DNA of 64,000 bases from Trichoplax adhaerens (GCF_000150275.1 NW_002060960.1:350189-414188); one strand, 5' to 3'; counted from the stretch's first letter, positions 65 through 18,410 are shown. Notes: a model not told the origin generated them from the sequence alone. Program-made: numbers and translations.

Positions 65-3000
65 ATTCGCGCAATCCAGCTATTTCGAAAATAATGATAA
101 TATTTCGGATCTAGATATGAACCATCAGTATTTCTAAATATTATTTCAAATAAGCACAGTTTAGTAAAGGGAATATTGAGATAGGGAGGGATGAATTAAG
201 TTGAATAATCCTGTTAGCTAGTCAGACTGACAAGGTTATGATGTATGGAAAGGTAGGTATTTTTAAGGATCTTTCTGTCGGAATGAACCTCTTAAGTGGA
301 TTTTCTCCAAGATCTCTATTATAATAATCTTGTTAGTCTAGCATTTTTTTTTGTTTAAAAATCAATTACTCCTATAACGTGCTGATGTTGGATATTTGAA
401 AGAAAGTCGGTAGGTTATTAATTGAATAGCCTAGTGGAAAATGTGAACGGTACTGCTTGAAGCAGCTAAGCTAGGTGGACATTAGTTACAGAAGAATGCG
501 AACTTTGAAGTTTCCTATTTACATTTATGCTAAAACAAGGTACATTTTCAAGTTACTCACAAGAAATATAAATTGTGAATTTTTTTTTCGAAACAGCTAA
601 GGTCGATCTCTTCTATTTGATTACTATCTAGAGTCCTATTAACAAAGGCAAGCCTATTATTGAATCTAAGCAGTTTAAAATCATTTTCTAACTTTCTTGA
701 ATCATTCCCAAATCCTTTAATAAGAAATAGTTACGTTAATGGCCGTCTTAATTACGCCTTTTACATTTGTGATATCGTAGTAACAGATTTATAAGTAGAG
801 TTCAGTATAAAATACTCGCTGACTATAGTTTTACACACTGAGACTTACAACTCCATTAAACGATATAAACCGACGAAGGTATTTTGTTTCAAAGTCGTTA
901 TCCGATTCTCTTCCAAACTCCTAAGTAAGGCAAATAATCAAGCTTATGTTATCAATTTTATTCAAAAACTTTTTACTGGAAGAAAAAATTGTTAACTGTA
1001 TGAAGAAAAGCGGTAACTTTGAATATCTTACAAATAGTACAAATTTTTTAAGTCCTGAAAAGCGTATTCCTCTATATTGTTTATCAAATTTAACCTCAAA
1101 TTCCTAGCAGTACAATTAAGTAATGGTTAACGGCTGAATCAAGTATAAGTTACGTAATTAAAAAAAAATTGTTGCTAAAAACAAGAACATAAGTTATTTG
1201 ATATTTCATCATTTCGGCGTCGAAAATTTACAGAGTCTCCAGATTTCCAAGAGCTTTAAATTGACCGATGATTACATCAGTAAGTTCGTTACCCAGCAAA
1301 GATCTAAAAATAGGGAGATCAGCTGATATTATATAACATTACAAAATGCTTTAGTAATGAATTAGTAAGCAATGGCTACGCTATTGAAATTGAGAATGGA
1401 ACATCAAAATTAACGCTAGACGTCATTGATATTGATAGTCTTGGGTTAAAAAATCTACTGTATATCAAGACTATCTGGGTAAGCTGGTATTGTTTCGTAA
1501 GTAAATGGAATAAAGTATTTTGAGACTGTTAGTTCAAGCTTTTTGCAAGGCTGAAAATTAAATTAACTTGACTTAACATCTACATGAGTTGATTTCGGTA
1601 TCTTAAACAGACTATAATTATTATCACTCACAATGTTCGTAATTCCGGCATCATAGCGAAACTATTGGGCTCAATGGATTGGATACTATTATATTGCAGT
1701 TGCCTGAATATAAGTATCGACAATATTGGAAATTAACGTAAATATCAGCTATCAGTATTAATCAAGCTGATTCAACGTTATATTAAAATAAATTATTAGT
1801 AATAAATGTTCATTTTTTCGGTATTAATAACGGTATATGATGTAATTCTTGTTTTAAATTTACATATCAAATCTTATTTTTGCGATTTAAGGCGGCATTT
1901 TCGTACTTACAGAGATTTTAATGAAGGGAGAAAAGGAAAACTGTCATTTTGAATTTTGGTTATACCGTTGCGGTTTAATTCCCTACAGCAGTCCTTTAAA
2001 AATTTAACTTGCATTCGTTTTAAAATTAAGTGTATTATTCACTTTAAGGTTAGCAAAATTCTAACATAACATAGATAGTTCCATCTTGTTTTACCCTTAG
2101 GCAGTTGTAAATGAATGTAAAAATTACATGTTACGCGATTTATAAAGTATGAAGGCTGATAATTTGCCGCAGTAATTAAGTTCAGTCTCGTGCATCTTAA
2201 AAAGCGGCTGTAAGTCCTAATGAGACTCTTCTATTAGTTTCAATTCTCACGTTGCAGATTTACATTTTTAACAGCGTACAATTATAATGACATATAAGAA
2301 AGATGAAACAATTAAATCCTTCATGATTACGATTAGAATTCTTTACATGCAGAAATTTAGCTTACTAAAACTGATAGTAAGATTATACTGCATAGCTTCC
2401 TTTGCTTTAGAATGTCGATCAATGAAGATATAATGTTCACGAAATATTTATTTTATAAGTCAATTTAGATTATTAATTACGTACAAATAATTTAGCCTCA
2501 CTAGTCTTTCAAATTTTCCCTTCTTCACCATAAACGGTGGATTTTTTATGTTTCTTACAATACTATATGAATTAAAGATACAGTTAAAATATGAAATATA
2601 GGTAGAATAAAAAGTATTTCAAATTTTCATTTTTCTATTATAGATGGTGGATTTTGTATGTTTCTAACGATACGATATAAATTTAAAATAGTATCCGTAT
2701 AAGTATATATAGAGAGAGGTATAAAGCATGAGTTACTGGCATAAAAGTGATTGAAAATGATGGCTCGAATCATCGATTTGCTCGGAAATTCAATAGTAAG
2801 TAAAATATCACATTTCAATAGCTACTATGTATCGTACTTAAAATCAAGCATAGAAAAATATATAGCTATATAACTTACAGATTTTTTAGCTTTGGATGAT
2901 GGCTGAAAGTAAGATTGGATGATATATAGCACGGATCAATAGTTCTATGTATCAATTCAAAAGGTATATCAATAATGTAATTTACATTGCCAAGGCAGTT

Positions 3001-6000
3001 CAAGATCTAATGAACGCTCGACATTAATTAAGGGAATTATAAATATGATAATGCCATGCTAATGCAATTCTACAGCTTATTACACTTACAGTAGGCAATA
3101 TTTTAGCACTACAAGAGTTTAACAAAAATACACTATCAATTAAAGTACATCATGAATAGTCTAGTATAATATCGGCATTACTTTACTATTGGCTTTACTC
3201 TATAGATTTTTTAGTTTATTTTTAAAATATATGGCCTTAAAATCTAATAGCTTACGCAAAAATAATATTTAGAATTACTCTAATAATTTATAGTAAAGAG
3301 TACTATTTTTTACTGGCATTATAGTCAAGCGATAGATTTGCTATCAGTAACACGCAAATTTTTTAATATTAGTTTACAATCGCTCTAAGTTTCTTAAGGC
3401 AGATATTTCCATGGCATTTCTCATGCTGATTTTCCTAAAATTTTAAATTTTGGAAGGTGTTACAAGTACTAAAATAGTGAGGAGTAAGGTAACAGCTAAG
3501 TTACTGATAACTACAATCAGCTAAAGCACATTTGATATGAATAGTTGTGTCAGTATATGCGTACTTACAGACTTTTAACCGGAGCAAGGATATTTTTTGC
3601 AGTGTTTGCAAAGTTTAATAATGGATTTTTAAGTAAATTTCTAATAATTGGTGATAAAAAATATACAATTTTTATTTGGTTTAGCAATGATACTTTTTAT
3701 AATATATAGCTATTAAGAAGCTTTCGTTAGATAAATGTTTCTTAGAGTGTATTTTGTGGTAATAAGTTTTCAGAAAGCTTTCTGCCTATAAAAATAACAT
3801 TTACAAATTTTGCACTCCAGCCAGATCCGTAATATTGTTATTATGGTCAGAATAGATGATAACAATATGATTTTCCTCAGCATCTCTAATGGAACAGCAG
3901 AACATTAATTATTAAAACAGTCTTCAAATTCATGGTAATAATTCAAAATTTCGCACTTAATATAATATGTAAGCGATATTACAGAAGAAAAGCTACTAAT
4001 TATGAATTATTGTACTTGCAGCTAAATACAAACTCTTACAAAGTTTTCAGTAAGACCAACTCAGGTAGATATGTAATATCAATAGTTTCAACTACGTTCC
4101 GTCTTATAGATCTATAAAATTAAAGATAGATTTCATTATTAAGGAGATGGGTAATGATAATTTATTATAAGATCATCAGCGAGACAGCTGCTATTTGCTA
4201 AACGATTCGCTACTAGTACTGCACTCTTAAATTGTTTAACTTACATTGTTTCTATTGATTTGCAACTATTTTTTCTTAAAGCTTCAAAATTAAAATTGGT
4301 GATGTGATTCATAGTAAGATTTCTAGCAAGATTAGAATTTAACTTAATCTCTTCAAAGATTTAGAGGTAATAAAGCGTTGTGCTCCAAAGATAATTAAAA
4401 AAAAATTTCCGTTAATTGTCCTTAAATAATCAAGTATATAAGATATTTATCTAAATGTGTTATCATTATAACACTAATCGAGCTGGTAAACTTATTGGTA
4501 AATTGCGCTAGACGAATTCTAACGGCAAGCCTTCGTAAATACGCCATGTTATAAGAATTAGGTAGAAATTGGATCGAATATAATCTTATTTCTGTCTAAA
4601 AGTAGATCACTACTGCACCAAATCCACTCTCTCGCTGCATGATACGAGTACTTAGCTGCTAATGAACACAATCATTGGATCCATTGCTGATACTTTCTTT
4701 ATGACTACATGATTGATAGGAAGTGATATTCTCTCTAAATCACCTAATTTACATATTATTTCTTAATCATCTGTTTACTAGATAAAGTGTGTTAAATTGA
4801 TACCGCTTAGTTAGTATTAGGGCCTACTATCACTTCCGTAAGCGTAATGTACTTTTTAACGGATTGTTATGAAAACCAAAATTTCTTCGATCATCAGGTT
4901 GGAAAAAGAATATCTATTTTATAGATTAAAGCCCTGAACAGGACTTTGCTTGTTTTAAATAAAGTGTATTAAAACAATTTAAGATAATAAGAATACATTT
5001 CTGGGTTATTTGTGTTCGCTGTAAAAAATAGAGAGAAGTCAAATAATCTTTAGCTTAATATTATGTACTGAACCATCAAGTCCGTTCTTATTAAGATAAA
5101 TGTATTCATTTATGCAGCGTTAGGTAGTTAGCCCGAGTGCGATTAGTAAACCCATACTAACGTCTTATGATTACTAATTTACCGCATTAGCTTTACATAA
5201 TAACTTAAATTATTATTGCAATATCTTTGCATATGCTGCACATATAAGATGAGAAATCTGATAACTTACAAAGAGATCAAATTATAGCTGCCGTTGCAAA
5301 CTTCTTCGTCGAAAGATTTGAAGTAATTATTATTTAAAAGCCTGAATTTAAAATATAAACTCTTGCTTGTCAAAATTATTCTTAGCACTTTGGGTGGTAG
5401 TAAGATACTCTACATTACATGAAGTTTACTACATTACTAAACTATAGAACCTACAAGTTTCTAAGAGAATAGAGACTTGAAAATACACCAGTTGGTAATT
5501 GACTTAATATATTGTGGCCCAAATGCCTATCAGATATCAAATAAAGTTTTTAACCGTAATTTATTAATGCTCTTTAATATCGACATCTATTTAAAATTAT
5601 AATGCAGAATATGGTAAATATACAAATGCTAGTATTTGGTTCTGAAGCTGATTTATTGGTTAAGCACATGTTGTAATTATTTCTGATATTTAATAATCGT
5701 ATTGGACATTATTTGGTAATAGAGACGTGATAAATGATTTTAAAGATCAGCAGCATTGCTTTTTTAAGCATCATTCCAATCTTACAATTTCTGCAAAGAA
5801 GACAGTCCGTAGAAAGTCATTGCTGTGACATTTTTAATTCTGTTGAAGGATAGGTTTCTATCAATAAAGTATTACATCGAAATTAAACACCTTAGCTTTG
5901 CTGACGTTTACCTTGTTTCGTATAAAATACGTAGAATTTAACAGTATGTCGATCAATTAAATAATGTATTTTTGACTTATATTTAGGAACTACTATATAG

Positions 6001-9000
6001 ATCAATTGTAAGACTAACGTGAATTTAATAACTGCAGTGATAGTTTCGTTTTACTACCAAAATTATCTTAAGGAATTATGTAAGCTGACAGCATCTAGGA
6101 TTATAAGAATAATGAAAGTAAATAACAATACTAGAAAGTGCCCTATCTCATGTACTGAGCGATTTCTGCTAAATATATGGAAAGATTTAGTTAGCCAAAA
6201 CTATATTTCAAAGCTAACATCTTTATATACACCAGATTGACTACATACAATTCAGTAAGGCGGCGAAGTTCTTTAAATGCCTGATCACAAATGTCGTAAA
6301 TTTGACTCCTTTGTAAGTCTCTAGCATATTGGCACAATAAATCAGAATGATATATTTTCTTCATCAATATCAATATAAAACTTTACACTTATAGTATATC
6401 TTTAGTACATACATTTGTAATTCAATAAATAGCTTATTGAATTAACTAATGTTACGTTTGTCCAGCAATTGCATTAACATGATTTTGTAGCTTTGAGATT
6501 ATGAATTACAAGTAACAGAGATGCTATTACACTGATTTTCATTGATATCAGACTCGAGGAGCTTTGAAGTTAAACAACTCATTCGATTACAGGTTCACTG
6601 ATGTATAGATTCATCACTATAACTAAATATTGCCTCTTTATACCGATACAGAAACTTACCGTATTGCTACGGGTGTAAATTATTATCAACATTTCATTAT
6701 ATCACTAGTAATATAGTATGATCAAAGGCCTTTGTAGTACTTTTACGTGTACAAATATAATTTAAGAACTGAAAGGGAAAAATTTTTCAGATACCAAAAC
6801 TACGTAACTGCTTATTAATTTCTCGGACGTAACTCCTCCAGTACATTAATTTTTGTACTTAAATTCACGGACTTACAATTTTTTTAGGCTAGGAAGGTGA
6901 CTTATATTTCCACATTTCAGGTAGTAAATATATCCACCTGATATATCCCTAGGAAAAATTTCATAATCGGCAATAAGTATTGAAAAATTAAAATAGTTTC
7001 AATTTGTTTGATTATCGTGAACCAGATGCAATAAGTATAAAAATAATAATATTTATATTGTCTTCTTTTTAATTGAGAATTTAAAATCAGAACTTTCAGA
7101 CATTGATGACTTTTCATAATTGCAAATCTAACTTTGGGTATTAATATGTACTGTGTCACTACATCATCTTAAAAATTATATTGCCATAATAGTCTACTAA
7201 CTATATGCAAAAAAAATTTCTTGACTGGTGTAGTTTTAACGTGCAATATTCGTACTTCTGTATCTAGATAATAAGCAATTAATAAGATCTATAGTTGTAA
7301 TAGTAGACTCTTTATGGATTGACGCCATGAGACATTGTATATTTTGTCTATTTAACTATTCCGAAGCTATAGAGATAATGGGCTGTACTAGAGCCTGCCT
7401 AAATTTTATACTTACAGATATGTAAGACGTGTCATGTTCTGAAAAGGCATAATTGCGAAATCTGTATATTTCATATGGCTAAAAAAGCTTAAACATAACA
7501 TAATTTTATTTGAAATGATTATACTTGAGCACTAATTTTAATGTGATTTGATCATACCAATTGGCGGCTATATTCACAATAATGATATGTATAGCACTTG
7601 CTAATGTTTACTATACTCGATACATTATATTCAAAATATATTTACGCAGAAATGAGGCGAGGTATTGCAAGATGGGTATCACCAGCAATGTTTTCTATTG
7701 GATTGAAGCTCATATCCCTAGTGTGTCATTAATATTGATTATCATGCCAGACTGTGATTGCTGATGTTTTAAAATGCTACGGTATTCTTCAAAGCTAAAT
7801 ATATATATATACAAGAAACCATTTCTATTTAATTTAATAAATTATAGTACTAAAAAATCACTTTATTGCTGCATATTTTCTAGAGTTTACTGCAGTACGG
7901 CTGAAACCAAGCACTTCCGAATCCGGAAGAAAAATTATAAAAGCAGTAAGGATTTACCATGAACATAATTAATTTTCTAGTAGTTCATAGCAAATAACTA
8001 ATATTTGATTACAGTATGTGCATGTTTGTTAATCATAGAACTTACAAATTCCTGAGTTTATGCAAGCCACTGAATAAATTTTTATGAACAAAACGAATGG
8101 TATTATTTCTTAGATTTCTTCCGGAAGAACAGGTAATATTAATTATAAATTTAATTAGAGCCGTAGTATATCAGTGAGGATAAAAACTATGAATTCTAGC
8201 GCATACTGGTAGAAATTTAATACATACATGTATGATAAATTGGTGGTGTTAGCAAAAGTTCCATATTTTACGTCTCGGAGGAATGAATTTGCAAAGATTC
8301 TAAGAACAGCAATATAGCATATTACCGCTACGCTAGTGGTATTAATCAATTTTTAGAAGTGAAAATTTATCCATTTTTTTATTTCTAGCAAGAAATTTCA
8401 TTTTAAGGATGCTTCTGCTATTATGCAGATAGTCTGGAGTGTTATAAGCTAATGGCTTGCAGGTGATCATAAATAATGAATGCAATTTATCTTATGTTAG
8501 TGCATAGGTGATTATACAAGTGAGATATTGAGCTACTAATACGGTAGAGGGAAAAATAGAGTAGTAAATCATTTATTAGGATATGATTAGCTCATTGTAC
8601 TTTAAGTGCTAAGAATAATGTCGACGCAAATACTGTAATCGTTTCCATATTGGATTAATGATGGTCCGCTGTAAAATATTGCTACTAATAATAATTTGAT
8701 TATGTGTAAAATAACTTAAAATGTTGCTATGCTGATTGTAGCTGAGAAGGTTATGGAGAGTCAAAAAGCGAGTGACATTAGATTATCCGATTGTTTCTCT
8801 AGAAGTCTTTCAGTAGTTTCATTCGGTTAGAGTAGAGCCGTATATAGCCAATCTTTGCATTAGATCTAATAAAGTTCTAATTTTTTATAAATTTTGAATT
8901 TTCGAGATCAAATTTTATCATTACAATATATACGATATTAGAAATATTGCTACTTCAACTGAATATGTGAAACGGAAGGGTGCACCTTAATTATATCTTG

Positions 9001-12000
9001 TTAAGATTATTGCAGTAATACATAAACATGTGGTGCCTTCAAAATAACAAACTTTAGGTAGAGCGCTGACAACTACGGTATTTATATAAGGCAGCTAGCT
9101 ATGTTTAAATAACTTCAGAAATCTACTTTCCAAATAATAGAAATTAATACGAAATATTATAGAGTCTTAGCCAATTATTTATATTTGATTAAATTTTAAT
9201 ATTTTAATTATGACCTACAGTGTTTTTAAGTTGTTCAATGTTTGAAAAATATCCTTATCCAAGAACTGCATTAACGACTCTCTTATTTCCCTGAAACAGC
9301 ATTGATTGTCAAAGTATTGAATACAAAAGGACACACACGCAAATATATTTAAAAGATTGATGGTAACTATAAAGTTTTAATTTTTTCCGCATAAATAGAT
9401 AGATATAAATGCGGGTATTGCACATTAAAACAAAATTATATTTCAAGTAAAATTTTAAAAACTTAGATTGATCATCACAGTTTGTAATATCAAGCAAGTT
9501 AAAATTCTTTTAAAAATTTGTAATTTTAAGCAACCATTAAACCAGTCAAAATAAGTAAAACATTTATCACAATTAGATAGAAAGCAATACATTATTTAAC
9601 TTACAAAATTTCCAATTTATTTAAAGGCTTAAAAATGTTTTTAGGAAGTATTTGCATTGGATTTTTATCTAAATTTCTATAAAAATATAAATAAGTTATG
9701 CATAATCTGCTCGTTGTTATACGTGAGCATGTTTAGTTATTTGAAAATTATACGAGCATTGGGATTTCTTGCCCCCAAAAATTGTAATTTATATTCTTAG
9801 CAACTATTGCAATTATATATTCGATATTATATAATTGCAGGATTGGGCAATATCGTTAATATCATGCCGTATTAACGCGTAAGTACTATAGAGTAGGTCA
9901 AGTGGATAACAGCAGTTGGAATTTAATTATTTCAGTTTGTGAATTATGATTACTAAGTTAAATTCGTTTAGAAAATTAGTTTATTCTAGTGACAAAACTT
10001 GTGAAGTAAGGGTATTTGATTTTATAACAAGTTGAAGTTTTTTTTGGAAAGCTAATTATCATTGTAGTACTGCAGCGCTGAGCTACTTTGTTAAAGGAGT
10101 TCAGAAAATTATTGCAGGAACCGAGCATTGCAGCAAGAGGAATTTCTAGTCATATGAATCACTCGCTTGTATAATAATTTTGATACAGTCTAACGCCAAA
10201 TCTTACACTACTCATTACTAGTTTTGATTTAGTCTATATAAGGCTAATAATTAGTCGTTATGTTACAATAATCTAGTCGTATACTGCTTTTGCAATCTCC
10301 GGCTTAATTCACCCTTTTAGAGTCATAACGTTAACTATGTGTTCGCAGTCATCGTATTACAAAAATCTTATAATAACTTTAACAAAGATTGCGTCAATTA
10401 TTTGCATCATCAAATAGGGCTTGATTTCTTAAGTGCTTGTGTGTCTTATGCCAGGAAGTAATTATTTTTTACTACGTTCTAGTCTCTAAACTCTAAGATT
10501 TATACTTATCAACAAAACTAGTATTGCAGCATTGCTTCATAAACCATTTAATTTCCTTCGATTTACAAATAGAGCATGGTGTAATTGAACTACTGCATAT
10601 ATATGCATAATGGCTCTTTCATCAATTCTCAACTTTACTTAGGAACTGGGTTTGGAGTGTGTGTAACGAAGAACTTAACATGAAGAATAATTTGATCTAT
10701 CGTATCGATATAGATTAGTAAATTAGTTATATTGATGACCATTTTTAATTATAGTCTAACTATAAATGTAAGCTAAAATTTAATTCCATTTTGAAAATGT
10801 TACGAAATTTATGGTATACCATTGCTATTACAGTTACAGTATACACGTATATTAATTATTAAATAGATTACTTTGTTACTAATATCTGAATTGTCAATAT
10901 GGCTAGAAATAGTACTGACACAGTCAACTTACAGATTTAACATATTCTCTAAACCATTGAATGCATCTTCATCAAGAGATGTAATCTTTGATTTGGCTAC
11001 ATTTCTATTGAAATAATAGCTATGATTAGTATGAAGATCTTAGCAAATAACCGGTAGAATATAGTTAACCTATCGGTTTTGACTCACAAGACTTGTAAAT
11101 TTTTTAAATTTAGGAAAGTATTACTACGGAGTGCTCCAATAGTACTCATTCCAATATCACTATAAAAAAATGGATCATAAAGTCAGAAATAGATTATTAT
11201 ATGACCGTAGTTCGATAGGAAAGTTATAGTGGTTTCAGTACAGATAGCGGAGATTTGGTAAGTTCTTTGAATTAATTTGTGAAATAGCACCCCCCAAGAA
11301 GCGGTTATAATAGACATCTCTATTGCAAAAGTTTAAAGAATAAATGAAAAGGTACATCAAATAATGTTCAAGATGATTATAGTACAATATAAGATAGATC
11401 AGAGAATCACTGTTCCAAGAACGGGTATTTTTACAACTGTAGTACCAGTATATTGTAATATTCGAAATCTGAAATTAGGCTATAGCCTAATATAAATAAC
11501 TATCTAATTGACGTAATTGACGTCATCATATCTATTGCAGTATTTTTAATAAAGTTTTACCAAAAGAAACACCAAGTAAGATATTTTGGTATTTTATTGG
11601 TATTAGATTTAGATACATTTGAACCTAAAAAATTTGCTCTACACATAAATAAAGTGAATTGAAAGTGAAAACACTATTTCATCGTTTTATGTCGTCCATC
11701 TTGTATTCTTAGATACTATTCATCAAATTGATGTTCCTGTCCAGTCATAACTTACATTTCGTAAATCCAAGGTTGAGGAATAGACGTATCAATTGGAAAT
11801 TCTTGAAGGAAATTATAGTATATGTGCCTTTATAGATAAATATGAACTTGATTATGTTTGCAGGTCAGAAATGATTAATACTTTGATTATACAGTTGCTG
11901 AAATTCTTCTCTTGCTACAACTACTGGTATATCTAACTATAGTTGTATAAAAGTATTTGTTTAACCTCATAAAGAGATGCTATTGCCGGGGTATCATAAC

Positions 12001-15000
12001 CTATAAGGTAAGTTAATTTCTATAATATCATATTATTTAACGATGCTATTAAGAATATGATATACGTGTCGTAATTGTCGCCCTTGATGTATACGTTATA
12101 TTTGCAAATGTAACTTGACTTTGAGGTACTACGGTAAAGACTCAGGGATGAATTTATACTAGTATAATCTTTACAAGTTACGTTTATTAACTATTCAAAT
12201 GTAATTAGAATTACTCTTAGCAATGGAAGAGGCTATATACCGCTAATGTTCTCTACAGTAGATATTTCGAGAACTTCGCTACTTAGAGAGTATCTTTTGA
12301 CACTGAAATCCTTGAATGACTGATTGCATTTTGTGCACAGTTGTAAGTATGTAGTCTTTCGGCTACTGATTGGTTACAGATAAGTCAGATCATCTGACTG
12401 ATATAGTTTTCTTATGATAGCAAATACCAATACAGTTATCCTATCTTACGTTGTACAAAAGGATGATATCCATGCGTATTTGTAATAGTACTAACGTAGA
12501 ATATACTACATATATACTGTGAATAATACCAAATTACAGCAATGCGATGACAATTAAGAAACTTATATAGGGAATTTTACTATAATTTTAAAGCTCTGCT
12601 TCGCATATACGAGTATGGTATAGTAATGCTGCTGTCTTATCGACTGAAATGGCCGATGACAGCTTTATACGGGTGTTTCAATTTTTCAAGTATTTTACTG
12701 GTTTATTTAATAATATAATTAATGTCATCGAAGGATTCCAATGCACTGAAAAATAACTAAATTGCTATTGTTATAACCAGAGTTATCGAAGAGAGGAGAA
12801 CTCATTTTATTTTCTTAGAATAAATTTTGTATCAAATATACTAGTATAGATTTTTGAAGTAATTACAACGGACAGGTAATATTATTGTATATTGTAATGC
12901 CAGTAAAATTTGTGTGCATATCTCCATGGTTAAGTAATCATAGTAGAATTAATGTATATTTGAAGATTTGGAACAGATTGTTTTAATCTTTTGTCACAAT
13001 CTATGCTATAGCAATAACATAGAACTTTTTGTTCTTCTTCGAATAAATTATTGTGCAAGCAAGTAATTTTTACTTTTGGGCATTAATTTGATGCTTCTCA
13101 TAATTGTGGTATTTCATAACTTTACTTATATGAAGAAAAACATAAACATTATCAGCTTTACTGAGATTATTATCCGAAACCAAGAGAATAATTAATTTAA
13201 AAAATTTTTGTGCTTCATGTACTTACACTTTCTGATAAGGAATAATCCAATGCTTAGGAAACTGATTTAAATGTCGGTTTACACAATTCATTTTTGAATT
13301 TGAACAAGAGCATCCTGAAGTGCATGGCAGGCGATCTTTGTATAATATTATGATAAACATTAAGAAATTATATATTAATGCGTCGTTATATCAGTATAAA
13401 CATACAGTCAGAAAGACGTAACTGTAAACTTTAGAACATACAAACATAAAAATTTCCCAATCTTTTTATTAATTATTTAGTAAAAATTAATTAGATCGCA
13501 TATGGCCTAATTCACCGCCTTCACATGTAGATAACTTATGGATTATTTTAAATTAAATACTGCGTAGGAAAACAATATCAACTTACGACAAACTATCTGT
13601 GGTAGGGATACATTATTATTGCTAGATGTTTTCCATAAAGGGCACGAAAATGGCTTACATACTTAGTTTAATATGTATAATAGGGTTAGTTAATATTCAA
13701 CAATAATCCATAATTGTTACAGATAATCCTCCATTGAATGAATGAAGAGTTACAATACCTTTTACATAATACATTCCATCTTTAATTGAGCAAGAATCTT
13801 TCGTACAATTCAACGCGCTATTTTTAATAGCTGCAATATCCATGGATACTAAAGTAAATTTATAAAGCAAATATAAACACTATTGAATTTATTTTCTAAA
13901 GCATTCTACCTTGTTAGCTATGTCGAGATTTAATTAGAATAGATTAAGTTTGTTTGTAATAAATTAATCATTGTTACCTAGTAAATTCAAATCAGCCGCT
14001 ATCATTAGATAGCTGAAATTCAATCATAATAATTGATCAATGAGATTTTGCAAATATACATGAGCCATTGAATTTTTAGTATTAACTGAACATTGATAAC
14101 GGATGCTCATGCAGCAATTCTGTAAATTAGCTAATTTTTAAATAAAAAATTGCAGCTTCATATCTTAGTATAGAAGAGCTGGATAGTCAGTATGACCTCA
14201 TGTTGATGAAATGTGATTCTTACTATTGAGTAGCACTGTGGCGAACTTCGACAAAGAAGATTTCATCGCATACTAAGTTCTATAAGTTTAAGAATTTTCG
14301 CTCTAAATTTTTAGCTAGGTATGCTCTAAATAAGTTAATTATCATATTTAGTCGGTTATACTATTTCTGTAGGGTATGTGTTTTATGCTTGATTTTTAAG
14401 AAACGTTGTTATAAGAAATTTTTCAGCCTGCCAGAGTTGGCTATACAGTATAATGATGTAATATCTCAGTCAATAAAGAAGCAACAACAGAATCTATTAT
14501 TATAAAACTTATTATGAGCTTGACACGATGAATTAAGCTAGCAGAACAAGCTTTTTTAAGCAGATTGTAGCCAAATACTTTTATAGGTAACATTTTTAGA
14601 AAGGACTCTTACATCATCTAATATCGCATTTAAATACAATCTTTTCAGTATCTGTAGCTTCAATTATCTTGTGGTATTCTACTTCATTTTATGTTCACCC
14701 ATCTTAACATAGTAGTCAACCGTAGCTAACGTTATATTTGATGAAGGCATAACGCAAATAGATCGTTCTACAGAATTGTTTTTAATATTTATAGTTATTC
14801 TAATTTTACGTGTATGACAAAAATAACTAAAAATCAAAGTGTTAGTATATGTCCATAAATGTGAAATTATATGATAAAAAATTACTATTATGCTAAATAT
14901 TACAAGCGGGAAGTTTACCAGTTAATATAGCAAAAGCTAATATATTTATGCAATTATCATTATCCTCTAACTACAACACGACACTATATCCATAACTAAA

Positions 15001-15721
15001 TAGATGGATAACTAATCTGTTTGCATGGATTTTTATCATCTGTCACTCACTGCCTTGTCTTGTTAGTGGAAAAACGATTATCGATACTCTAGTTCTTCAT
15101 GCGCTAAGATTATTTTACAGACTGCAAGATACTATTCTAAAAATGGTTAGCAATTTATACTTCAAAAGTTGGCTAACTTCACAGTTGCCGATACGAGAAA
15201 ACGTTTTATTTACTTTCGATTTTTAAACACTAATGCAATTTTCCGTATAAAATGTTAGCGTGAGAAATAATTACGCCTATTGAGCAAATATTTCATGCAG
15301 ATAAGATTCGATTTCTAAATTGATTTACTTTAATACGATTTACCGCAATTGACTTCATCGAATCCGTTTTTACAGTGCAATTTGCAATCACAAAACTGCG
15401 ATGCATCAAGACTAGCAGCTGAATTCCCGCATTGTAGTGTATGAATTTCTGAAAAAATATCACAATATAGCCTTGATTTAATCTATATATATACTGTATA
15501 CAATAAATAGTCTTACAGTGAAAGTCTATTAAAATCAAGTCAGTTATGATAACTGCTCCGTTATATTATATATCAATTCCATCACGTCTAATTAATAGTA
15601 GTATATCGCTTCAAGGAGAATGCTACATAATTTAAAGATTCAATGAATTATACAACTACCCGAATTCACCTGGAATTAGTAAACCAAGCAGTAGTAAACT
15701 TTGAATAGTAAATAGCACCAT
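65..15721 (-). CDS. Signal peptide + LDLa + LRRNT + >=26 LRR receptor ectodomain (RXFP/type-C LGR-like); 3'-partial, continues beyond position 1
   Basis: Exons assembled by hand, all with GT donors and AG acceptors and compatible phases. 15721-15670 MVLFTIQSLLLLGLLIP (signal peptide); 15448-15344 EIHTLQCGNSAASLDASQFCDCKLHCKNGFDEVNC (LDLa); 14767-14699 ERSICVMPSSNITLATVDYYVKMG; 13314-13227 CSCSNSKMNCVNRHLNQFPKHWIIPYQKV (LRRNT). Phase-2/2 LRR exons follow: 11827-11756, 11319-11242, 11159-11088, 11004-10933, 9676-9605, 9290-9219, 8299-8228, 8117-8046, 7717-7646, 7487-7416, 6948-6877, 6320-6249, 5857-5786, 5526-5455, 5341-5270, 4322-4245, 4111-4040, 3885-3805, 3640-3569, 2944-2879, 1982-1911, 1703-1632, 1103-1032, 920-849, 635-561, 315-232, and probably 133-65. 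Examples: NLSFNRIKNVTAMTFYGLSSLQKL, HLGHNILSQLPTGVFSSLYSLRNL, SLEENRITTLKQNTFVGLYRLMEL. GPCR identity is inferred from the LDLa-LRR order only. Confidence 0.88.
2507..2690. repeat. Diverged intronic tandem duplication, period about 110 bp
   Basis: tttcaaattttc...ggtggattt-tatgtttct-ac-atac-atat-aatt-aa-ata at 2507-2580 and 2617-2690. Confidence 0.7.
15344..15448 (-). other. LDL-receptor class A (LDLa) module exon of the LRR gene
   Basis: 105-nt phase-1/1 exon encoding QCGNSAASLDASQFCDCKLHCKNGFDEVNC, matching the LDLa C-terminal pattern C-D-x4-C-x-N-G-x-D-E-x2-C. Confidence 0.8.
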
Positions 15722-18410
15722 ATTGATCACTTTCATTTCCAAGAACATCTCGGTAACGATGCTAATCTGAAATTATGAATGTGGAAGGCTTGGCTTACGT
15801 TAAAGTACTGGACCGGCACTACTGTTGTAATGCAAGTATCCTATTAAAATTTATTTTAATCAGAAGTACATAAAGTATAGAAGACGGTTTAAATTTCTGG
15901 AAAAGACGTCATTTATTATAATAAATAGCTATTGTAACAATTGCTAATTAAATTTAATTAGTTCATATCTCTAATCTATTTTTCGTTCTTGGGAAAAATT
16001 TTTGTTAAGAATCTTGCTAGCTGACCATATTATTAATGTGTGTTTAAAGTTAGAATAATGTAAATGGAAGTCAGTTATTTATTGTCTAATTAGCGAGAAA
16101 AGACATGCGCAATCTTATAAATGAAGTGTTTAGGATTTCATTTATTAAAGACAAACTGGGAGTATATAGTTATTACTTTCAGCTCTTTGTAACAAAAAGA
16201 AATCGCCAGGTCCAAAAATGTGGTACTCTCTATACCTACACTTGGAGCAGTATCGATAAGGAATTACTTAACAAGCAGTGCCTCAGTAATACTCATCCAG
16301 TAAAGTTACCTTAACACCGCACGATCTATATCTACTTTTATTATTAATAGCTAAAAGCCTTATATGACAATATACATGTTTTACAGCAATACGAATATCA
16401 TACATAACGCGATACACGAAGTGAGGTTGGCCAATCGGAATCAAACAACTGCATAAAGATTGAAAACGAGACTTCGATGATAATAATATTTTTCTTACAC
16501 AAATTTAGAAATCAAAGTTGAGGTTTCTGAGAGAGCCGCATACAAAATAGTTTTATCGAAAGCAATAACACAAGAATTAAACACACTTCATACTCGTTTC
16601 TATGTAATCAACGATGCAATATAAACCGTATTTAAACACCTATCTTAATAAATTTAATATCTTACTACAGTATTGAATGCTTCACATCAAATTAGTTACA
16701 GTCAATAGTTCACTCTATGACAATAGTCGACAAGCAAAGCATTTGGATTAGTTGATCTAAATGTTTATTCATTTATGCATGCATAGCATAACTTGGTAAA
16801 GAAAGCGTAACAATCTTATTTTAGAAAAATAACTAAATACAATACTTTCTAACATTAGCGTAATTGGATATAATAGCAGAGATGCTAATTTTCATAAATA
16901 TGACTTCGGTGACCGTAAACTCCATTATGATTAAAATAATAGAAGAAGGATAATTGGATTGGCTATCTTATTCCTTTGAATAAGTCACGTTTTAAAAAGA
17001 TTTTTATGCTCATTACTGCAGTTCGTATAAGCATATCAATCGTGATTTTTTTTTATGAAATGTAATAAATTTATTGCGAGTAACCTTAAATTACATATTA
17101 AAAGTACAAGTTTTGCTTTCGTATTAATAGCCTGTATCGACAGTTACGAAAGTAATGGAATTGTAGTCATTTTAGATAGTTCACAGAAGTAAAGTATGTT
17201 GAAGCAAGATTAAAATAAAATAAATAGCAATGATGTGATTATAGGAAGAAAAAGAAATATAAATATTTCATGATAGTGTACGTAATGAACAGAGTATACA
17301 ACAGCCTGCCTTAAATTCACTACACATCTCTTGTGTTCACGATAAATAATTAATATTAAATGGTTAATACTGTATGTTGAATAGATGTGGTACTATATTG
17401 TTATCTTTGCTCTCTTTTTCTTTCAATGAAAGCTCTAATTTACTTATCTAATTATATTTCGGATCTTGGTAATTAGGAAGAAAGTCTTTTTAATAACGTT
17501 ATAGCTTCCTAATCAGAATAACATTTTTTAACAATAATTTGGTCATAGGTATATAAAAGAGCTGTCCATATTTCTTGAGAAAGTAATAGAATAACTTCCC
17601 ATTTATGAATATTTATATGCCATATGTTTTCTTCATTGATATTCAATCAATTTGACATTGCATGTTGCTGAAAAATTTTCAAAAACTTGCCTTAATTACT
17701 GTATTGCGGGAAAGTCATAGAAATTAAAGTATCCAATTGAAATTTGGGATTATGAGTTAGAAACATTGCAGCTGCCAATAAATTCCGATTTTCAACAGTT
17801 TTATTATATGTTTTTCACAATTAATTAATCGCATACATATATATCCCTCCGTTATGTAAAAAATTACTAGAGGTTACTAGCAGAGTATAGGGCTATTTTG
17901 TATAATAAATGCTTGCTAAGAGGAGGCTGCTTGATTTGCTAAAATAATTTTCTTGAGCAAAAAAGATGTAAGGTATTTCAATTTGGGAAATCTTTTATTA
18001 AAGGGCTCTTTGAATTTGCTATTTCATTTAGTTTTGTTCGATAAATCTGTGATCTTCACCACAATGCAACATAGTATTGATAGTAATGAATATCGTATGA
18101 GTATTTTTAATTGGAAGAATAACGTGAATCCTAGGCTACAAAATTTAGAAGATGCAATTGCTCTGTTTCATGTGACGCCACCGGTACAGAAGCAAATTTA
18201 CACATTTAACTGACAAATGTATATGATAAGTACAATAAAAAGTACTGCAGCTCACTAAGTTTATAAGATGTTGACTTCTGCTATATCTAATGACTGAAAT
18301 AACTAAATTAGCTCGAAAGATAGCAATTAAAACTGAAGCAATAGCACGCAAACTAGAGGATTCCTACAAAACAAGCACAAACAGTATTATAGTCGGATTG
18401 CCGGACTTAT

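What the first reader, a model, noticed from the sequence alone, without database searches (positions are those of the whole stretch)
65..15721. Hidden LDLa-LRR receptor with at least 26 LRRs in a region the ORF track shows as nearly empty
Seen: about 31 small exons give a continuous frame of signal peptide, LDLa, linker, LRRNT and at least 26 LRRs, still open at the window edge. Established: a single N-terminal LDLa followed by LRRs is the ectodomain of relaxin-family (RXFP1/2, type-C LGR) GPCRs, which have about 10 LRRs. Inference: this is a type-C-like LGR with a much longer solenoid. Irregular repeats near LRR16-20 (78, 81 and 66-nt exons) may join two regular LRR blocks. That points to a larger or different ligand than an insulin-fold peptide, or to a sensing role.
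Basis: partly seen in the sequence, partly recalled or inferred. Interest (0 to 1): 0.8.

Follow-up and report, generated by a model that had tools for sequence, protein, structure and literature searches.

The report
Giant LRR hormone-type receptor gene, Trichoplax
The window holds the front two thirds of a real, badly annotated Trichoplax adhaerens gene for a G-protein-coupled receptor with about 47 leucine-rich repeats, one of a family of oversized receptors already described in 2022, with a worn-down LDLa module at its tip and a dead-kinase-like tail that had not been pointed out.

Summary
On the minus strand, 32 AG/GT-bounded exons (window 15748 to 232) read as one open frame of 811 aa. 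They encode a signal peptide, an LDLa-like module, a linker, an LRRNT and 28 LRRs, and the frame is still open at the window edge.

The genome is Trichoplax adhaerens. Leftwards the array continues with about 19 more LRR exons; three of these are seen only in the gap-free Trichoplax sp. H2 ortholog. It ends in a short Cys-rich hinge and a single 7TM exon 10.6 kb outside the window. That exon matches RXFP1 best in the PDB. Five further exons encode a kinase-like tail that lacks the catalytic aspartates.

The same exon order (LDLa, LRRNT, 7TM 20-35 kb on, tail) recurs at seven or more paralogous loci, so this is one gene. The LRR exons are under purifying selection (pN/pS 0.28).

The kind is already published: 41 placozoan-specific LGRs with very many LRRs (PMC9545775). 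This scan also followed up a 49-LRR paralog on other DNA of this genome.

Two features look unreported: the degenerate LDLa, and the pseudokinase-like tail shared with GRL101-like receptors of other phyla. The spliced protein was never sent to a search tool; exons were searched one by one.

The parts
15670..15748 (-). exon 1: start codon and signal-like hydrophobic peptide (26 aa + 1 base)
   Evidence: Read from the sequence. Donor CCAG|GTGAAT, phase 1. No signal-peptide predictor was run.
15344..15448 (-). exon 2: divergent LDLa module (lacks Cys1 and Cys3, CDG changed to CDC, NGxDE acidic cage kept)
   Evidence: Pfam silent on this copy. 10+ paralogous exons in the genome. Their profile hits only LDLa chains in the PDB, with RXFP2 LDLa at E 3.4e-4. 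6 of 9 copies hit Ldl_recept_a.
13759..13848 (-). exon 3: linker, 30 aa with 2 Cys
   Evidence: Phase-compatible with exons 2 and 4. Weak matches in two paralogs lie exactly between their LDLa and LRRNT exons.
13227..13335 (-). exon 4: LRRNT cap (CxxxCxC...C...L..FP)
   Evidence: Pfam LRRNT E 0.001, 19 bits, below the 25.8 cut-off. 13 paralogous exons lie 1.4-4 kb downstream of LDLa exons.
11756..11827 (-). LRR1 exon, 72 nt
   Evidence: completes the LxLxxNxL motif begun at the end of the LRRNT exon
11242..11319 (-). LRR2 exon, 78 nt, irregular
11088..11159 (-). LRR3 exon, 72 nt
10933..11004 (-). LRR4 exon, 72 nt
   Evidence: Pfam LRR_8 E 0.03
9605..9676 (-). LRR5 exon, 72 nt
9219..9290 (-). 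LRR6 exon, 72 nt
8228..8299 (-). LRR7 exon, 72 nt
8046..8117 (-). LRR8 exon, 72 nt
   Evidence: Pfam LRR_8 E 4.9e-4
7646..7717 (-). LRR9 exon, 72 nt
7416..7487 (-). LRR10 exon, 72 nt
6877..6948 (-). LRR11 exon, 72 nt
6249..6320 (-). LRR12 exon, 72 nt
5786..5857 (-). LRR13 exon, 72 nt
   Evidence: Pfam LRR_8 E 0.002
5455..5526 (-). LRR14 exon, 72 nt
   Evidence: Pfam LRR_8 E 0.039
5270..5341 (-). LRR15 exon, 72 nt
   Evidence: same exon in H2
4245..4322 (-). LRR16 exon, 78 nt, irregular
4040..4111 (-). LRR17 exon, 72 nt
3805..3885 (-). LRR18 exon, 81 nt, irregular
3569..3640 (-). LRR19 exon, 72 nt
2879..2944 (-). LRR20 exon, 66 nt, irregular
2485..2562 (-). LRR21 exon, 78 nt, irregular, weakest of the set
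1911..1982 (-). LRR22 exon, 72 nt
   Evidence: Pfam LRR_8 E 0.014. The upstream H2 gene model ends here by reading into the intron.
1632..1703 (-). LRR23 exon, 72 nt
   Evidence: Pfam LRR_8 E 6.3e-4
1232..1303 (-). LRR24 exon, 72 nt
1032..1103 (-). LRR25 exon, 72 nt
   Evidence: Pfam LRR_8 E 0.004
849..920 (-). LRR26 exon, 72 nt
   Evidence: Pfam LRR_8 E 0.004
561..635 (-). LRR27 exon, 75 nt (a 105-nt alternative acceptor at 665 is possible)
232..315 (-). LRR28 exon, 84 nt, irregular. The gene runs on leftwards out of the window: about 19 more LRR exons, the 7TM exon at L003:8296-9353 (minus strand) and five tail exons down to about window -15420.

Best explanation
This is one minus-strand gene of Trichoplax adhaerens, about 31 kb long and with roughly 57 exons (32 in the window). 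It encodes a protein of about 1,850 aa, a giant leucine-rich-repeat GPCR (LGR). Reading from the N-terminus: a signal peptide; one degenerate LDLa module; a linker; an LRRNT cap; about 47 LRRs of 24 residues, each on its own phase-symmetric exon; a short four-Cys hinge; a rhodopsin-type 7TM; a Ser/Thr-rich stretch; a kinase-like domain without catalytic aspartates; and a helical end. It belongs to a subfamily of about 13 close paralogs within the published placozoan LGR expansion. Its LDLa, hinge, 7TM and tail tie it to the type-C/GRL101 branch of LGRs. The architecture, the family placement and purifying selection are shown. The way it works is inferred. An extracellular protein or peptide ligand probably binds the concave face of the long LRR solenoid. 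This is relayed to the 7TM through the hinge, and possibly through the tethered LDLa-linker as in RXFP1/2. The 7TM keeps DRF, CWxP and NPxxY, so it probably couples to G proteins. The pseudokinase-like tail probably acts as a docking or regulatory scaffold rather than an enzyme.
For: Organism: the 7TM exon is 100% identical to TRIADDRAFT_15639, on a contig of the same length, 1,229,666 bases.
Frame: 32 in-window exons read open with uniform phase, and the LRR exons continue to window -9063.
Gaps: the H2 ortholog locus L005 has no gaps and supplies three LRR exons that fall in the N runs of the H1 assembly.
7TM: Pfam 7tm_1 E 1e-26. RXFP1 is the best PDB match, and the alignment includes the hinge.
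LDLa.
One gene: LDLa exons pair with a close-paralog 7TM exon 20-35 kb downstream on the same strand at seven loci, including this one. LRRNT exons lie 1.4-4 kb after the LDLa exons. Tail exons lie 1-4.5 kb after more than a dozen 7TM exons of the close subfamily, two of them broken copies.
Junctions: the 7TM-to-tail junction is canonical (CAA|GTGAGT ... ttaattag|GT, phase 1) and is the one used in the H2 model RDD40602.1.
Selection, H1 versus H2: LRR exons pN/pS 0.28 (17 nonsynonymous, 16 synonymous changes in 33 exons) and 7TM 0.37. There are no indel columns in 4,310 exon bases against 59 in 14,579 intron bases.
Tail: Pfam kinase hits, weak but repeated, in four paralogs. The profile of the alphaE/catalytic-loop exon hits protein kinases (CDKL3 3.8e-5 and many more). 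The N-lobe exon profile hits only the TGFBR2 kinase (E 1.5). The AlphaFold model of a paralog tail (pLDDT 67-90 over the domain) matches at least 500 kinase chains in Foldseek, E about 5e-7, probability 1.00.
Against: No transcript evidence was available here. Public gene models split or truncate the gene: TRIADDRAFT_15639 is a 268-aa fragment, and in H2 there is a 300-aa LRR model plus the 900-aa RDD40602.1 with an artificial start. Eight or nine of the counted LRR exons are irregular and score poorly, and three more candidates are doubtful, so the count is 47 with a range of about 38-53. The H1 assembly has a 1,179-N run and a 50-N run inside the gene. Pfam does not see the LDLa in this copy, and LRRNT and kinase hits are below the curated cut-offs. 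The AlphaFold model of the ortholog itself was poor (mean pLDDT 55.8), so the kinase fold rests on a paralog 36% identical overall. The last tail junction needs a weak donor (GTCATT) to keep the long reading. Ligand, coupling and tail function are entirely inferred.
Confidence: 0.8

Rival explanations
1. There are two or three separate genes: a secreted or anchored LDLa-LRR protein encoded in the window, and a shorter LGR to its left, as the Trichoplax sp. H2 annotation has it.
For: The H2 annotation has a 300-aa LRR model ending at L005:3497. It has a separate 900-aa model starting at the position of window -4442, with 6.5 kb unannotated between them.
Against: The H2 upstream model ends only because it reads CTG TAA into the intron after a normal 72-nt LRR exon. 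The start of the H2 downstream model overlaps an LRR-like stretch in another frame and has no signal peptide or LRRNT. The unannotated stretch holds in-phase LRR exons that are conserved between H1 and H2. The window part has no stop, TM or LRRCT. The LDLa...7TM pairing recurs at seven or more loci.
Confidence: 0.1
2. It is a decaying or non-functional copy of the family: a pseudogene, or a gene with many dead exons.
For: The family does contain broken copies: 7TM exons with stops at C1390:641407-642422 and C1394:267743-268396. This copy's LDLa is the only one of nine with no Pfam-detectable signal and with His in place of the second acidic residue. Several exons are irregular. A decayed LRR-like stretch without a donor lies at window 8802-8876.
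Against: All 32 in-window exons, the 7TM exon and the tail exons are open in both H1 and H2. pN/pS is 0.28-0.37 and there are no exonic indels. The 7TM keeps DRF, CWLP and NPILY.
Confidence: 0.06
3. It is a true ortholog of relaxin-family receptors (canonical type C) and binds one of the Trichoplax insulin-like peptides through its LRRs and LDLa, as RXFP1/2 do.
For: RXFP1 is the best solved relative of the 7TM and hinge. RXFP2 and RXFP1 LDLa modules are among the best hits of the N-terminal module profile.
Against: The published tree places three other Trichoplax receptors in type C and 41 in a separate placozoan clade (PMC9545775). The LDLa has lost its first disulfide. There are about 47 LRRs instead of about 10. 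The kinase-like tail is shared with GRL101-like receptors, which I did not find in the arthropod relaxin-receptor hits. About 13 close paralogs imply diversified ligands.
Confidence: 0.08

Closest known systems
Placozoan-specific LGRs of Koch and Grimmelikhuijzen 2022 (PMC9545775), e.g. Tadh-LGR15 with 34 LRRs
   Same: Same species. Rhodopsin-type 7TM preceded by an unusually long LRR array and a short Cys-rich hinge. Part of a large lineage-specific expansion: the paper counts 41, and I find 74 related 7TM matches in the genome.
   Different: The review describes only N-termini and shows no LDLa and no C-terminal domain for this group. Here there is a degenerate LDLa at the tip, about 47 LRRs and a kinase-like tail. 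Whether this very gene is in their table cannot be told, because it lists TriadITZ identifiers only.
Relaxin-family receptors RXFP1/RXFP2 (type-C LGRs; PDB 7TMW, 2JM4, 2M96)
   Same: The order signal peptide, single LDLa, linker, LRRNT, LRRs, hinge, 7TM. The 7TM and hinge are the best PDB match (132 bits). The LDLa profile hits RXFP2 and RXFP1 LDLa modules.
   Different: About 47 LRRs instead of about 10. The LDLa lacks Cys1 and Cys3 and has an odd extra Cys. The linker is not similar. A kinase-like tail is present. The ligand is unknown.
GRL101-type (type C2) LGRs of molluscs, arthropods, hemichordates and echinoderms
   Same: H2 paralogs are named GRL101-like by NCBI. A profile of the placozoan tail finds the post-7TM region of GRL101-like receptors (P0173 1e-17, P0127, P0081 Glandiceps, P0067 Ptychodera, P0101 Holothuria). 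Those regions also give weak Pfam kinase hits.
   Different: GRL101-type receptors have 4-12 canonical LDLa repeats, often with CUB, C-type lectin or MAM domains, and few LRRs. This one has a single worn LDLa and a very long LRR array.
GPCR-kinase fusions (GPCR-TKL/K and GPCR-TK of choanoflagellates and sponges, GPCR-PIPK of oomycetes and amoebae; PMC12716839)
   Same: A 7TM domain followed in the same polypeptide by a kinase-fold domain.
   Different: Those 7TMs are not LGRs, and their kinases look catalytically complete. Here HRD reads HGN and DFG reads GNF, the Gly-rich loop is absent, and the C-lobe after the DFG position is replaced by long helices. It is therefore at best a pseudokinase.

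Membership tests
LGR (leucine-rich-repeat-containing GPCR) | rhodopsin-type seven-transmembrane domain | tested here: met
   Pfam 7tm_1 E 1.1e-26, profile positions 1-260 of 260. DRF, CWLP and NPILY are present.
LGR (leucine-rich-repeat-containing GPCR) | N-terminal array of LRRs | tested here: met
   28 in-window and about 19 further LRR exons. 8 of 10 single exons hit Pfam LRR_8.
LGR (leucine-rich-repeat-containing GPCR) | LRRs and 7TM on one polypeptide | tested here: inconclusive
   Phase continuity runs from exon 1 to the 7TM exon. The H2 model RDD40602.1 joins the proximal LRR exons to the 7TM. The order LDLa...7TM recurs at seven or more loci. No transcript data were available.
Type-C LGR (RXFP1/2-like) | single N-terminal LDLa module (homology) | tested here: met
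   The profile of nine paralogous copies hits only LDLa chains in the PDB (TMPRSS6 1.5e-4, RXFP2 3.4e-4, LDLR/RXFP1 chimera 1.5e-3). 6 of 9 copies hit Ldl_recept_a, best E 7.9e-5.
Type-C LGR (RXFP1/2-like) | canonical six-cysteine LDLa recognisable by Pfam in this copy | tested here: not met
   No Pfam hit at E<=10. Cys1 and Cys3 are absent in all copies, and CDG is changed to CDC.
Type-C LGR (RXFP1/2-like) | about 7-10 LRRs | tested here: not met
   About 47 LRR exons.
Type-C LGR (RXFP1/2-like) | 7TM and hinge closest to relaxin receptors | tested here: met
   RXFP1 E 2.9e-37 against TSHR 7e-30 and LGR4 2e-11. The alignment starts in the hinge (C..AP.V..C.P). This is score ranking only; no tree with outgroups was built.
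Type-C LGR (RXFP1/2-like) | activated by an insulin/relaxin-fold peptide | not testable with these tools
   Needs a receptor assay.
GRL101-type LGR | multiple LDLa repeats before the LRRs | tested here: not met
   Only one LDLa-like exon lies between the signal peptide and the LRRNT.
GRL101-type LGR | shared post-7TM domain | tested here: met
   An HMM built from placozoan tails matches the tails of GRL101-like proteins of other phyla. E-values are for a set of only about 200 proteins. Pfam kinase hits fall at the same place.
Placozoan-specific LGR clade (PMC9545775) | Trichoplax LGR with an unusually high LRR number, outside the canonical A/B/C sets | tested here: inconclusive
   Species and LRR number fit. 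Closest relatives are about 13 Trichoplax paralogs at 50-62% identity. Presence in the paper's list cannot be checked because it uses TriadITZ ids.
Protein kinase superfamily (tail) | kinase fold | tested here: met
   The AlphaFold model of the paralog P0032 tail matches at least 500 kinase chains in Foldseek, E about 5e-7. The exon profile hits kinases at alphaE and the catalytic loop. Pfam scores are below the cut-off in this gene. The ortholog's own model was poor.
Protein kinase superfamily (tail) | catalytic HRD aspartate and DFG aspartate | tested here: not met
   This gene reads IIHGNISKDN and LLGNFSS. Some paralogs keep GDF, and one keeps HGD.

The most novel reading that the evidence does not exclude
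The giant placozoan LGRs and the GRL101-type receptors of bilaterians share an unrecognised intracellular kinase-fold domain, mostly catalytically dead, fused directly after the 7TM. There would then be an ancient animal family of LGR-pseudokinase fusion receptors. The placozoan 'orphan' LGR clade would be a GRL101/type-C derivative that traded LDLa repeats for LRRs.
Probability: 0.5. Interest if true: 0.65.

Novelty: new member of a known kind. Interest (0 to 1): 0.45.

Why it matters
Trichoplax has no neurons yet carries dozens of hormone-receptor-type GPCRs with oversized ectodomains, and nobody knows what they sense. A correct full-length model is the precondition for cloning and deorphanising one of them. 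Public records hold only a 268-aa fragment and a truncated 900-aa model, against about 1,850 aa here. The worn LDLa and the tail shared with GRL101-like receptors give the 'placozoan-specific' clade a concrete place next to type-C/GRL101 LGRs. If the tail is confirmed, it would extend GPCR-kinase-fold fusions to placozoans, hemichordates and echinoderms; a 2025 survey found them only in choanoflagellates and sponges among holozoans. In itself, the gene is one more member of a family already described.

Tried and rejected
- The look-up of encoding contigs on TRIADDRAFT_15639 gave nothing.
- The word search with the tail of P0192 (residues 640-900) found no relatives. The tail family had to be assembled from paralogs already in hand and from the genome itself.
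- Pfam on exon 2 alone was blank three times.
- The first AlphaFold job (P0192, 900 aa, 11 sequences) was too poor to use for the tail.
- The profile of the DFG-side exon found no kinases, and the N-lobe exon profile reached only E 1.5.
- I looked for more LRR exons between the LRRNT and LRR1 (window 13226-11828) and in the other long introns. None was credible, and the LRRNT exon splices well directly to LRR1.
- Candidates 8741-8634, 3434-3378, 133-65, -1343..-1405, -3813..-3857 and -9658..-9705 were left out as doubtful.
- The LRR-like stretches at 8802-8876 and -4423..-4482 lack splice sites.
- Mapping to the paper's Tadh-LGR numbers failed because it gives TriadITZ ids only.
- No phylogeny was built, because no type-A or type-B sequences were in hand as files.
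- The spliced protein was not sent to any search or folding tool. It was joined only inside scripts, to check the frame and count length.
- Nothing here looks human.
Full report
**What is in the window**

The region is AT-rich (about 29% GC) and has no long bacterial-style ORFs. On the minus strand, short stop-free stretches read R-x-L-x-x-N-x-I-x-x-I-x-x-x-x-F-x-x-L-x-x-L-x-x-L and end at GTAAGT-type donors.

- Each repeat sits on its own exon. The exon is nearly always 72 nt, begins with the third base of a split Leu/Ile codon and ends with the first two bases of the next.
- I trained an HMM on 32 clear exons. A chain search over all AG...GT in-phase candidates and hand reading of the 5' end gave 32 in-window exons.
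- These are the signal-like exon 15748-15670, the LDLa-like exon 15448-15344, the linker 13848-13759, the LRRNT 13335-13227 and 28 LRR exons from 11827 to 232.
- Joined in a script only, they give 2435 nt with no stop and are still open at the left edge.
- Eight of ten single exons hit Pfam LRR_8 alone. The other strand and the rest of the window give no such exons.
They lie between a regular block of 15 repeats and one of 5.

**Where it comes from, and what lies to the left**

The window is contig C1397:350189-414188 of a 105.6-Mb, 1,414-contig assembly. I fetched 30 kb to its left. That sequence holds a 371-codon open frame on the same strand.

- It is a complete rhodopsin-type 7TM (Pfam 7tm_1 E 1e-26).
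- It is 100% identical to the 268-aa fragment TRIADDRAFT_15639 of Trichoplax adhaerens.
- Between the window and this exon the same kind of LRR exon continues: 16 credible ones at window -3110 to -9134.
- The last LRR exon splices in phase (CT|G) to a hinge with four Cys, followed by TM1.
- Two N runs interrupt the H1 assembly inside the gene: 1,179 N immediately left of the window, and 50 N.
- The orthologous locus of Trichoplax sp. H2 (L005; 98% identical, no N) shows three more LRR exons in these places.
- The credible total is about 47 LRRs, with a range of roughly 38-53 depending on how the irregular and doubtful exons are treated.

**Which kind of LGR**

- Among solved structures the 7TM and hinge match RXFP1 best (131.9 bits). 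TSHR, FSHR and LHCGR follow (102-108 bits), and LGR4 is far behind (47 bits).
- The whole-library search found the nearest relatives to be Trichoplax paralogs. After those come relaxin-receptor-like and GRL101-like proteins of many phyla.
- Exon 2 gives no Pfam hit by itself.
- The genome, however, holds at least ten paralogous exons with the pattern L-x-C-G-x-S-x-Q-x-I-x(4)-F-C-D-C-x-x-D-C-x-N-G-x-D-E-x-x-C.
- A profile of nine of them hits nothing but LDLa modules in the PDB, with RXFP2 and RXFP1 LDLa near the top. Six of the nine hit Pfam Ldl_recept_a singly.
- The module is therefore an LDLa. It has lost its first disulfide (Cys1 and Cys3), gained a Cys in the CDG motif and kept the acidic cage.
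- LRRNT is weakly supported (E 0.001, below the cut-off).

**One gene or several**

The H2 annotation splits the locus into two models.

- A 300-aa LRR model stops by reading CTG TAA into the intron after LRR22.
- The 900-aa RDD40602.1 has an artificial start in the middle of the array and some retained intron.

Four observations point to a single gene.

- Phase is unbroken from exon 1 to the 7TM exon.
- The front part lacks a stop, a TM segment or a C-cap, and the back part lacks a signal peptide or an N-cap.
- The architecture repeats. LDLa-like exons lie 20-35 kb upstream of a close-paralog 7TM exon on the same strand at seven loci, including this one. LRRNT exons lie 1.4-4 kb after the LDLa exons. 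Weak linker matches sit exactly between them in two paralogs.
- Selection acts on the exons. Between H1 and H2, 33 LRR exons show 17 nonsynonymous and 16 synonymous differences (pN/pS 0.28). The 7TM shows 0.37. Exons carry no indel columns against 59 in the introns.

No transcript data were available to me, so this remains an inference.

**The tail**

The TAA that ends the 7TM open frame lies 5 nt beyond a GTGAGT donor.

- Spliced there (phase 1) to an exon at window -11928, the frame continues through five exons to about window -15420. The H2 model does the same.
- The last junction is uncertain.
- The roughly 270-aa tail is homologous among eight or more paralog models from two annotation pipelines.
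- Its exons follow more than a dozen 7TM exons of the close subfamily within 1-4.5 kb.
- Pfam gives weak, repeated kinase hits at the same profile positions.
- The profile of the middle exon hits dozens of protein kinases at alphaE and the catalytic loop. The apparent TALE-repeat hits in that search are summed noise.
- The N-lobe exon profile hits only the TGFBR2 kinase, at the beta3 Lys, alphaC and beta4 (E 1.5).
- The next exon carries LLG[D/N/K]FSS where kinases have DFG.
- An AlphaFold model of a paralog tail (P0032; domain pLDDT about 67-90) matches at least 500 kinase chains in Foldseek at E about 5e-7. The model of the ortholog itself was poor.
- In this gene the catalytic loop reads HGN and the DFG position reads GNF. 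After that position, long helices replace the rest of the C-lobe. This describes a pseudokinase-like scaffold.
- The same domain is found after the 7TM of GRL101-like receptors from hemichordates, a sea cucumber and others.
- I found no mention of it in the papers searched.

**What is already known**

- Koch and Grimmelikhuijzen (2022, PMC9545775) re-annotated 46 LGRs in T. adhaerens. They placed 41 in a placozoan-specific clade with its own hinge and 'an unusually high number' of LRRs, and Tadh-LGR15 has 34.
- Their table gives TriadITZ identifiers only, so I cannot say which entry, if any, is this gene.
- This scan has already followed up another piece of the same genome with a 49-LRR paralog. 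That follow-up reached the same family assignment and reported no LDLa there.
- The present gene is thus a further member of a known kind.
- New here are the full-length model, the divergent LDLa shared by at least ten paralogs, and the kinase-like tail that links the subfamily to GRL101-type receptors.

**How it probably works (inferred)**

- The long solenoid offers a very large concave binding face. Its regular blocks are interrupted by irregular repeats, which may act as kinks.
- About 13 close paralogs and moderately relaxed selection suggest diversified ligands. These may be endogenous peptides or environmental cues.
- The 7TM keeps the motifs needed for G-protein coupling.
- The LDLa-linker may act as a tethered activator, as in RXFP1/2. 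Its position at the far end of 47 repeats makes that uncertain.
- The tail most likely docks partners.

**Limits**

- The spliced protein was never handed to a search or fold tool. Exons were searched singly by reference.
- No phylogeny with outgroups was built.
- No signal-peptide predictor was run.
- The E-values refer to a set of about 200 proteins.

Noticed in passing
L002:4228-4372 (window -5628..-5772) against L005 around 11175-11187: Trichoplax sp. H2 lacks about 145 bases that H1 has. The deletion removes the last bases and the donor of the 75-nt LRR exon at window -5556..-5630. The two lineages may therefore differ by one LRR cassette. Because all LRR exons share one phase, gain, loss or skipping of any of them keeps the frame.
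   Followed up: partly
L004 and L003, window about -25400 to -19000, plus strand (L005:24263-30848): An ABCC/MRP-type ABC transporter gene (TMD0_ABC, ABC_membrane, ABC_tran x2; a 1,547-aa model in H2) lies tail-to-tail with the receptor gene.
   Followed up: no
G000:C1390:641407-642422, C1394:267743-268396 and 269514-269708, C922, C636: Several close paralogs of the 7TM exon and of the tail exon carry in-frame stops, so the family includes broken copies. Many members sit in tandem clusters on C1394, C1414, C1380, C1410 and C1413.
   Followed up: no
L019:1501-1692 (G000:C1404:1078767-1078958, plus strand): One paralogous tail exon keeps HGD...DN in the catalytic loop, and no close-paralog 7TM match was listed on C1404. 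Two other paralogs keep GDF at the DFG position. Some members, or a free-standing relative, might still bind nucleotide or be active.
   Followed up: no
window 8802-8876 and L002:5518-5577 (window -4423..-4482), minus strand: These LRR-like stretches lack usable splice sites, one a donor and the other an acceptor. They look like decayed repeat exons inside introns. The artificial start codon of the H2 model overlaps the second one in another frame.
   Followed up: partly
L002:8822-10000 (window -1178..0) and L002:7586-7635: N runs of 1,179 and 50 bases lie inside the gene in the H1 assembly. The first ends exactly at the window's first base. H2 has 1,170 and about 786 bases at the matching places (the 786 spans the 50-N run and its unaligned flanks), with LRR exons in them.
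   Followed up: yes
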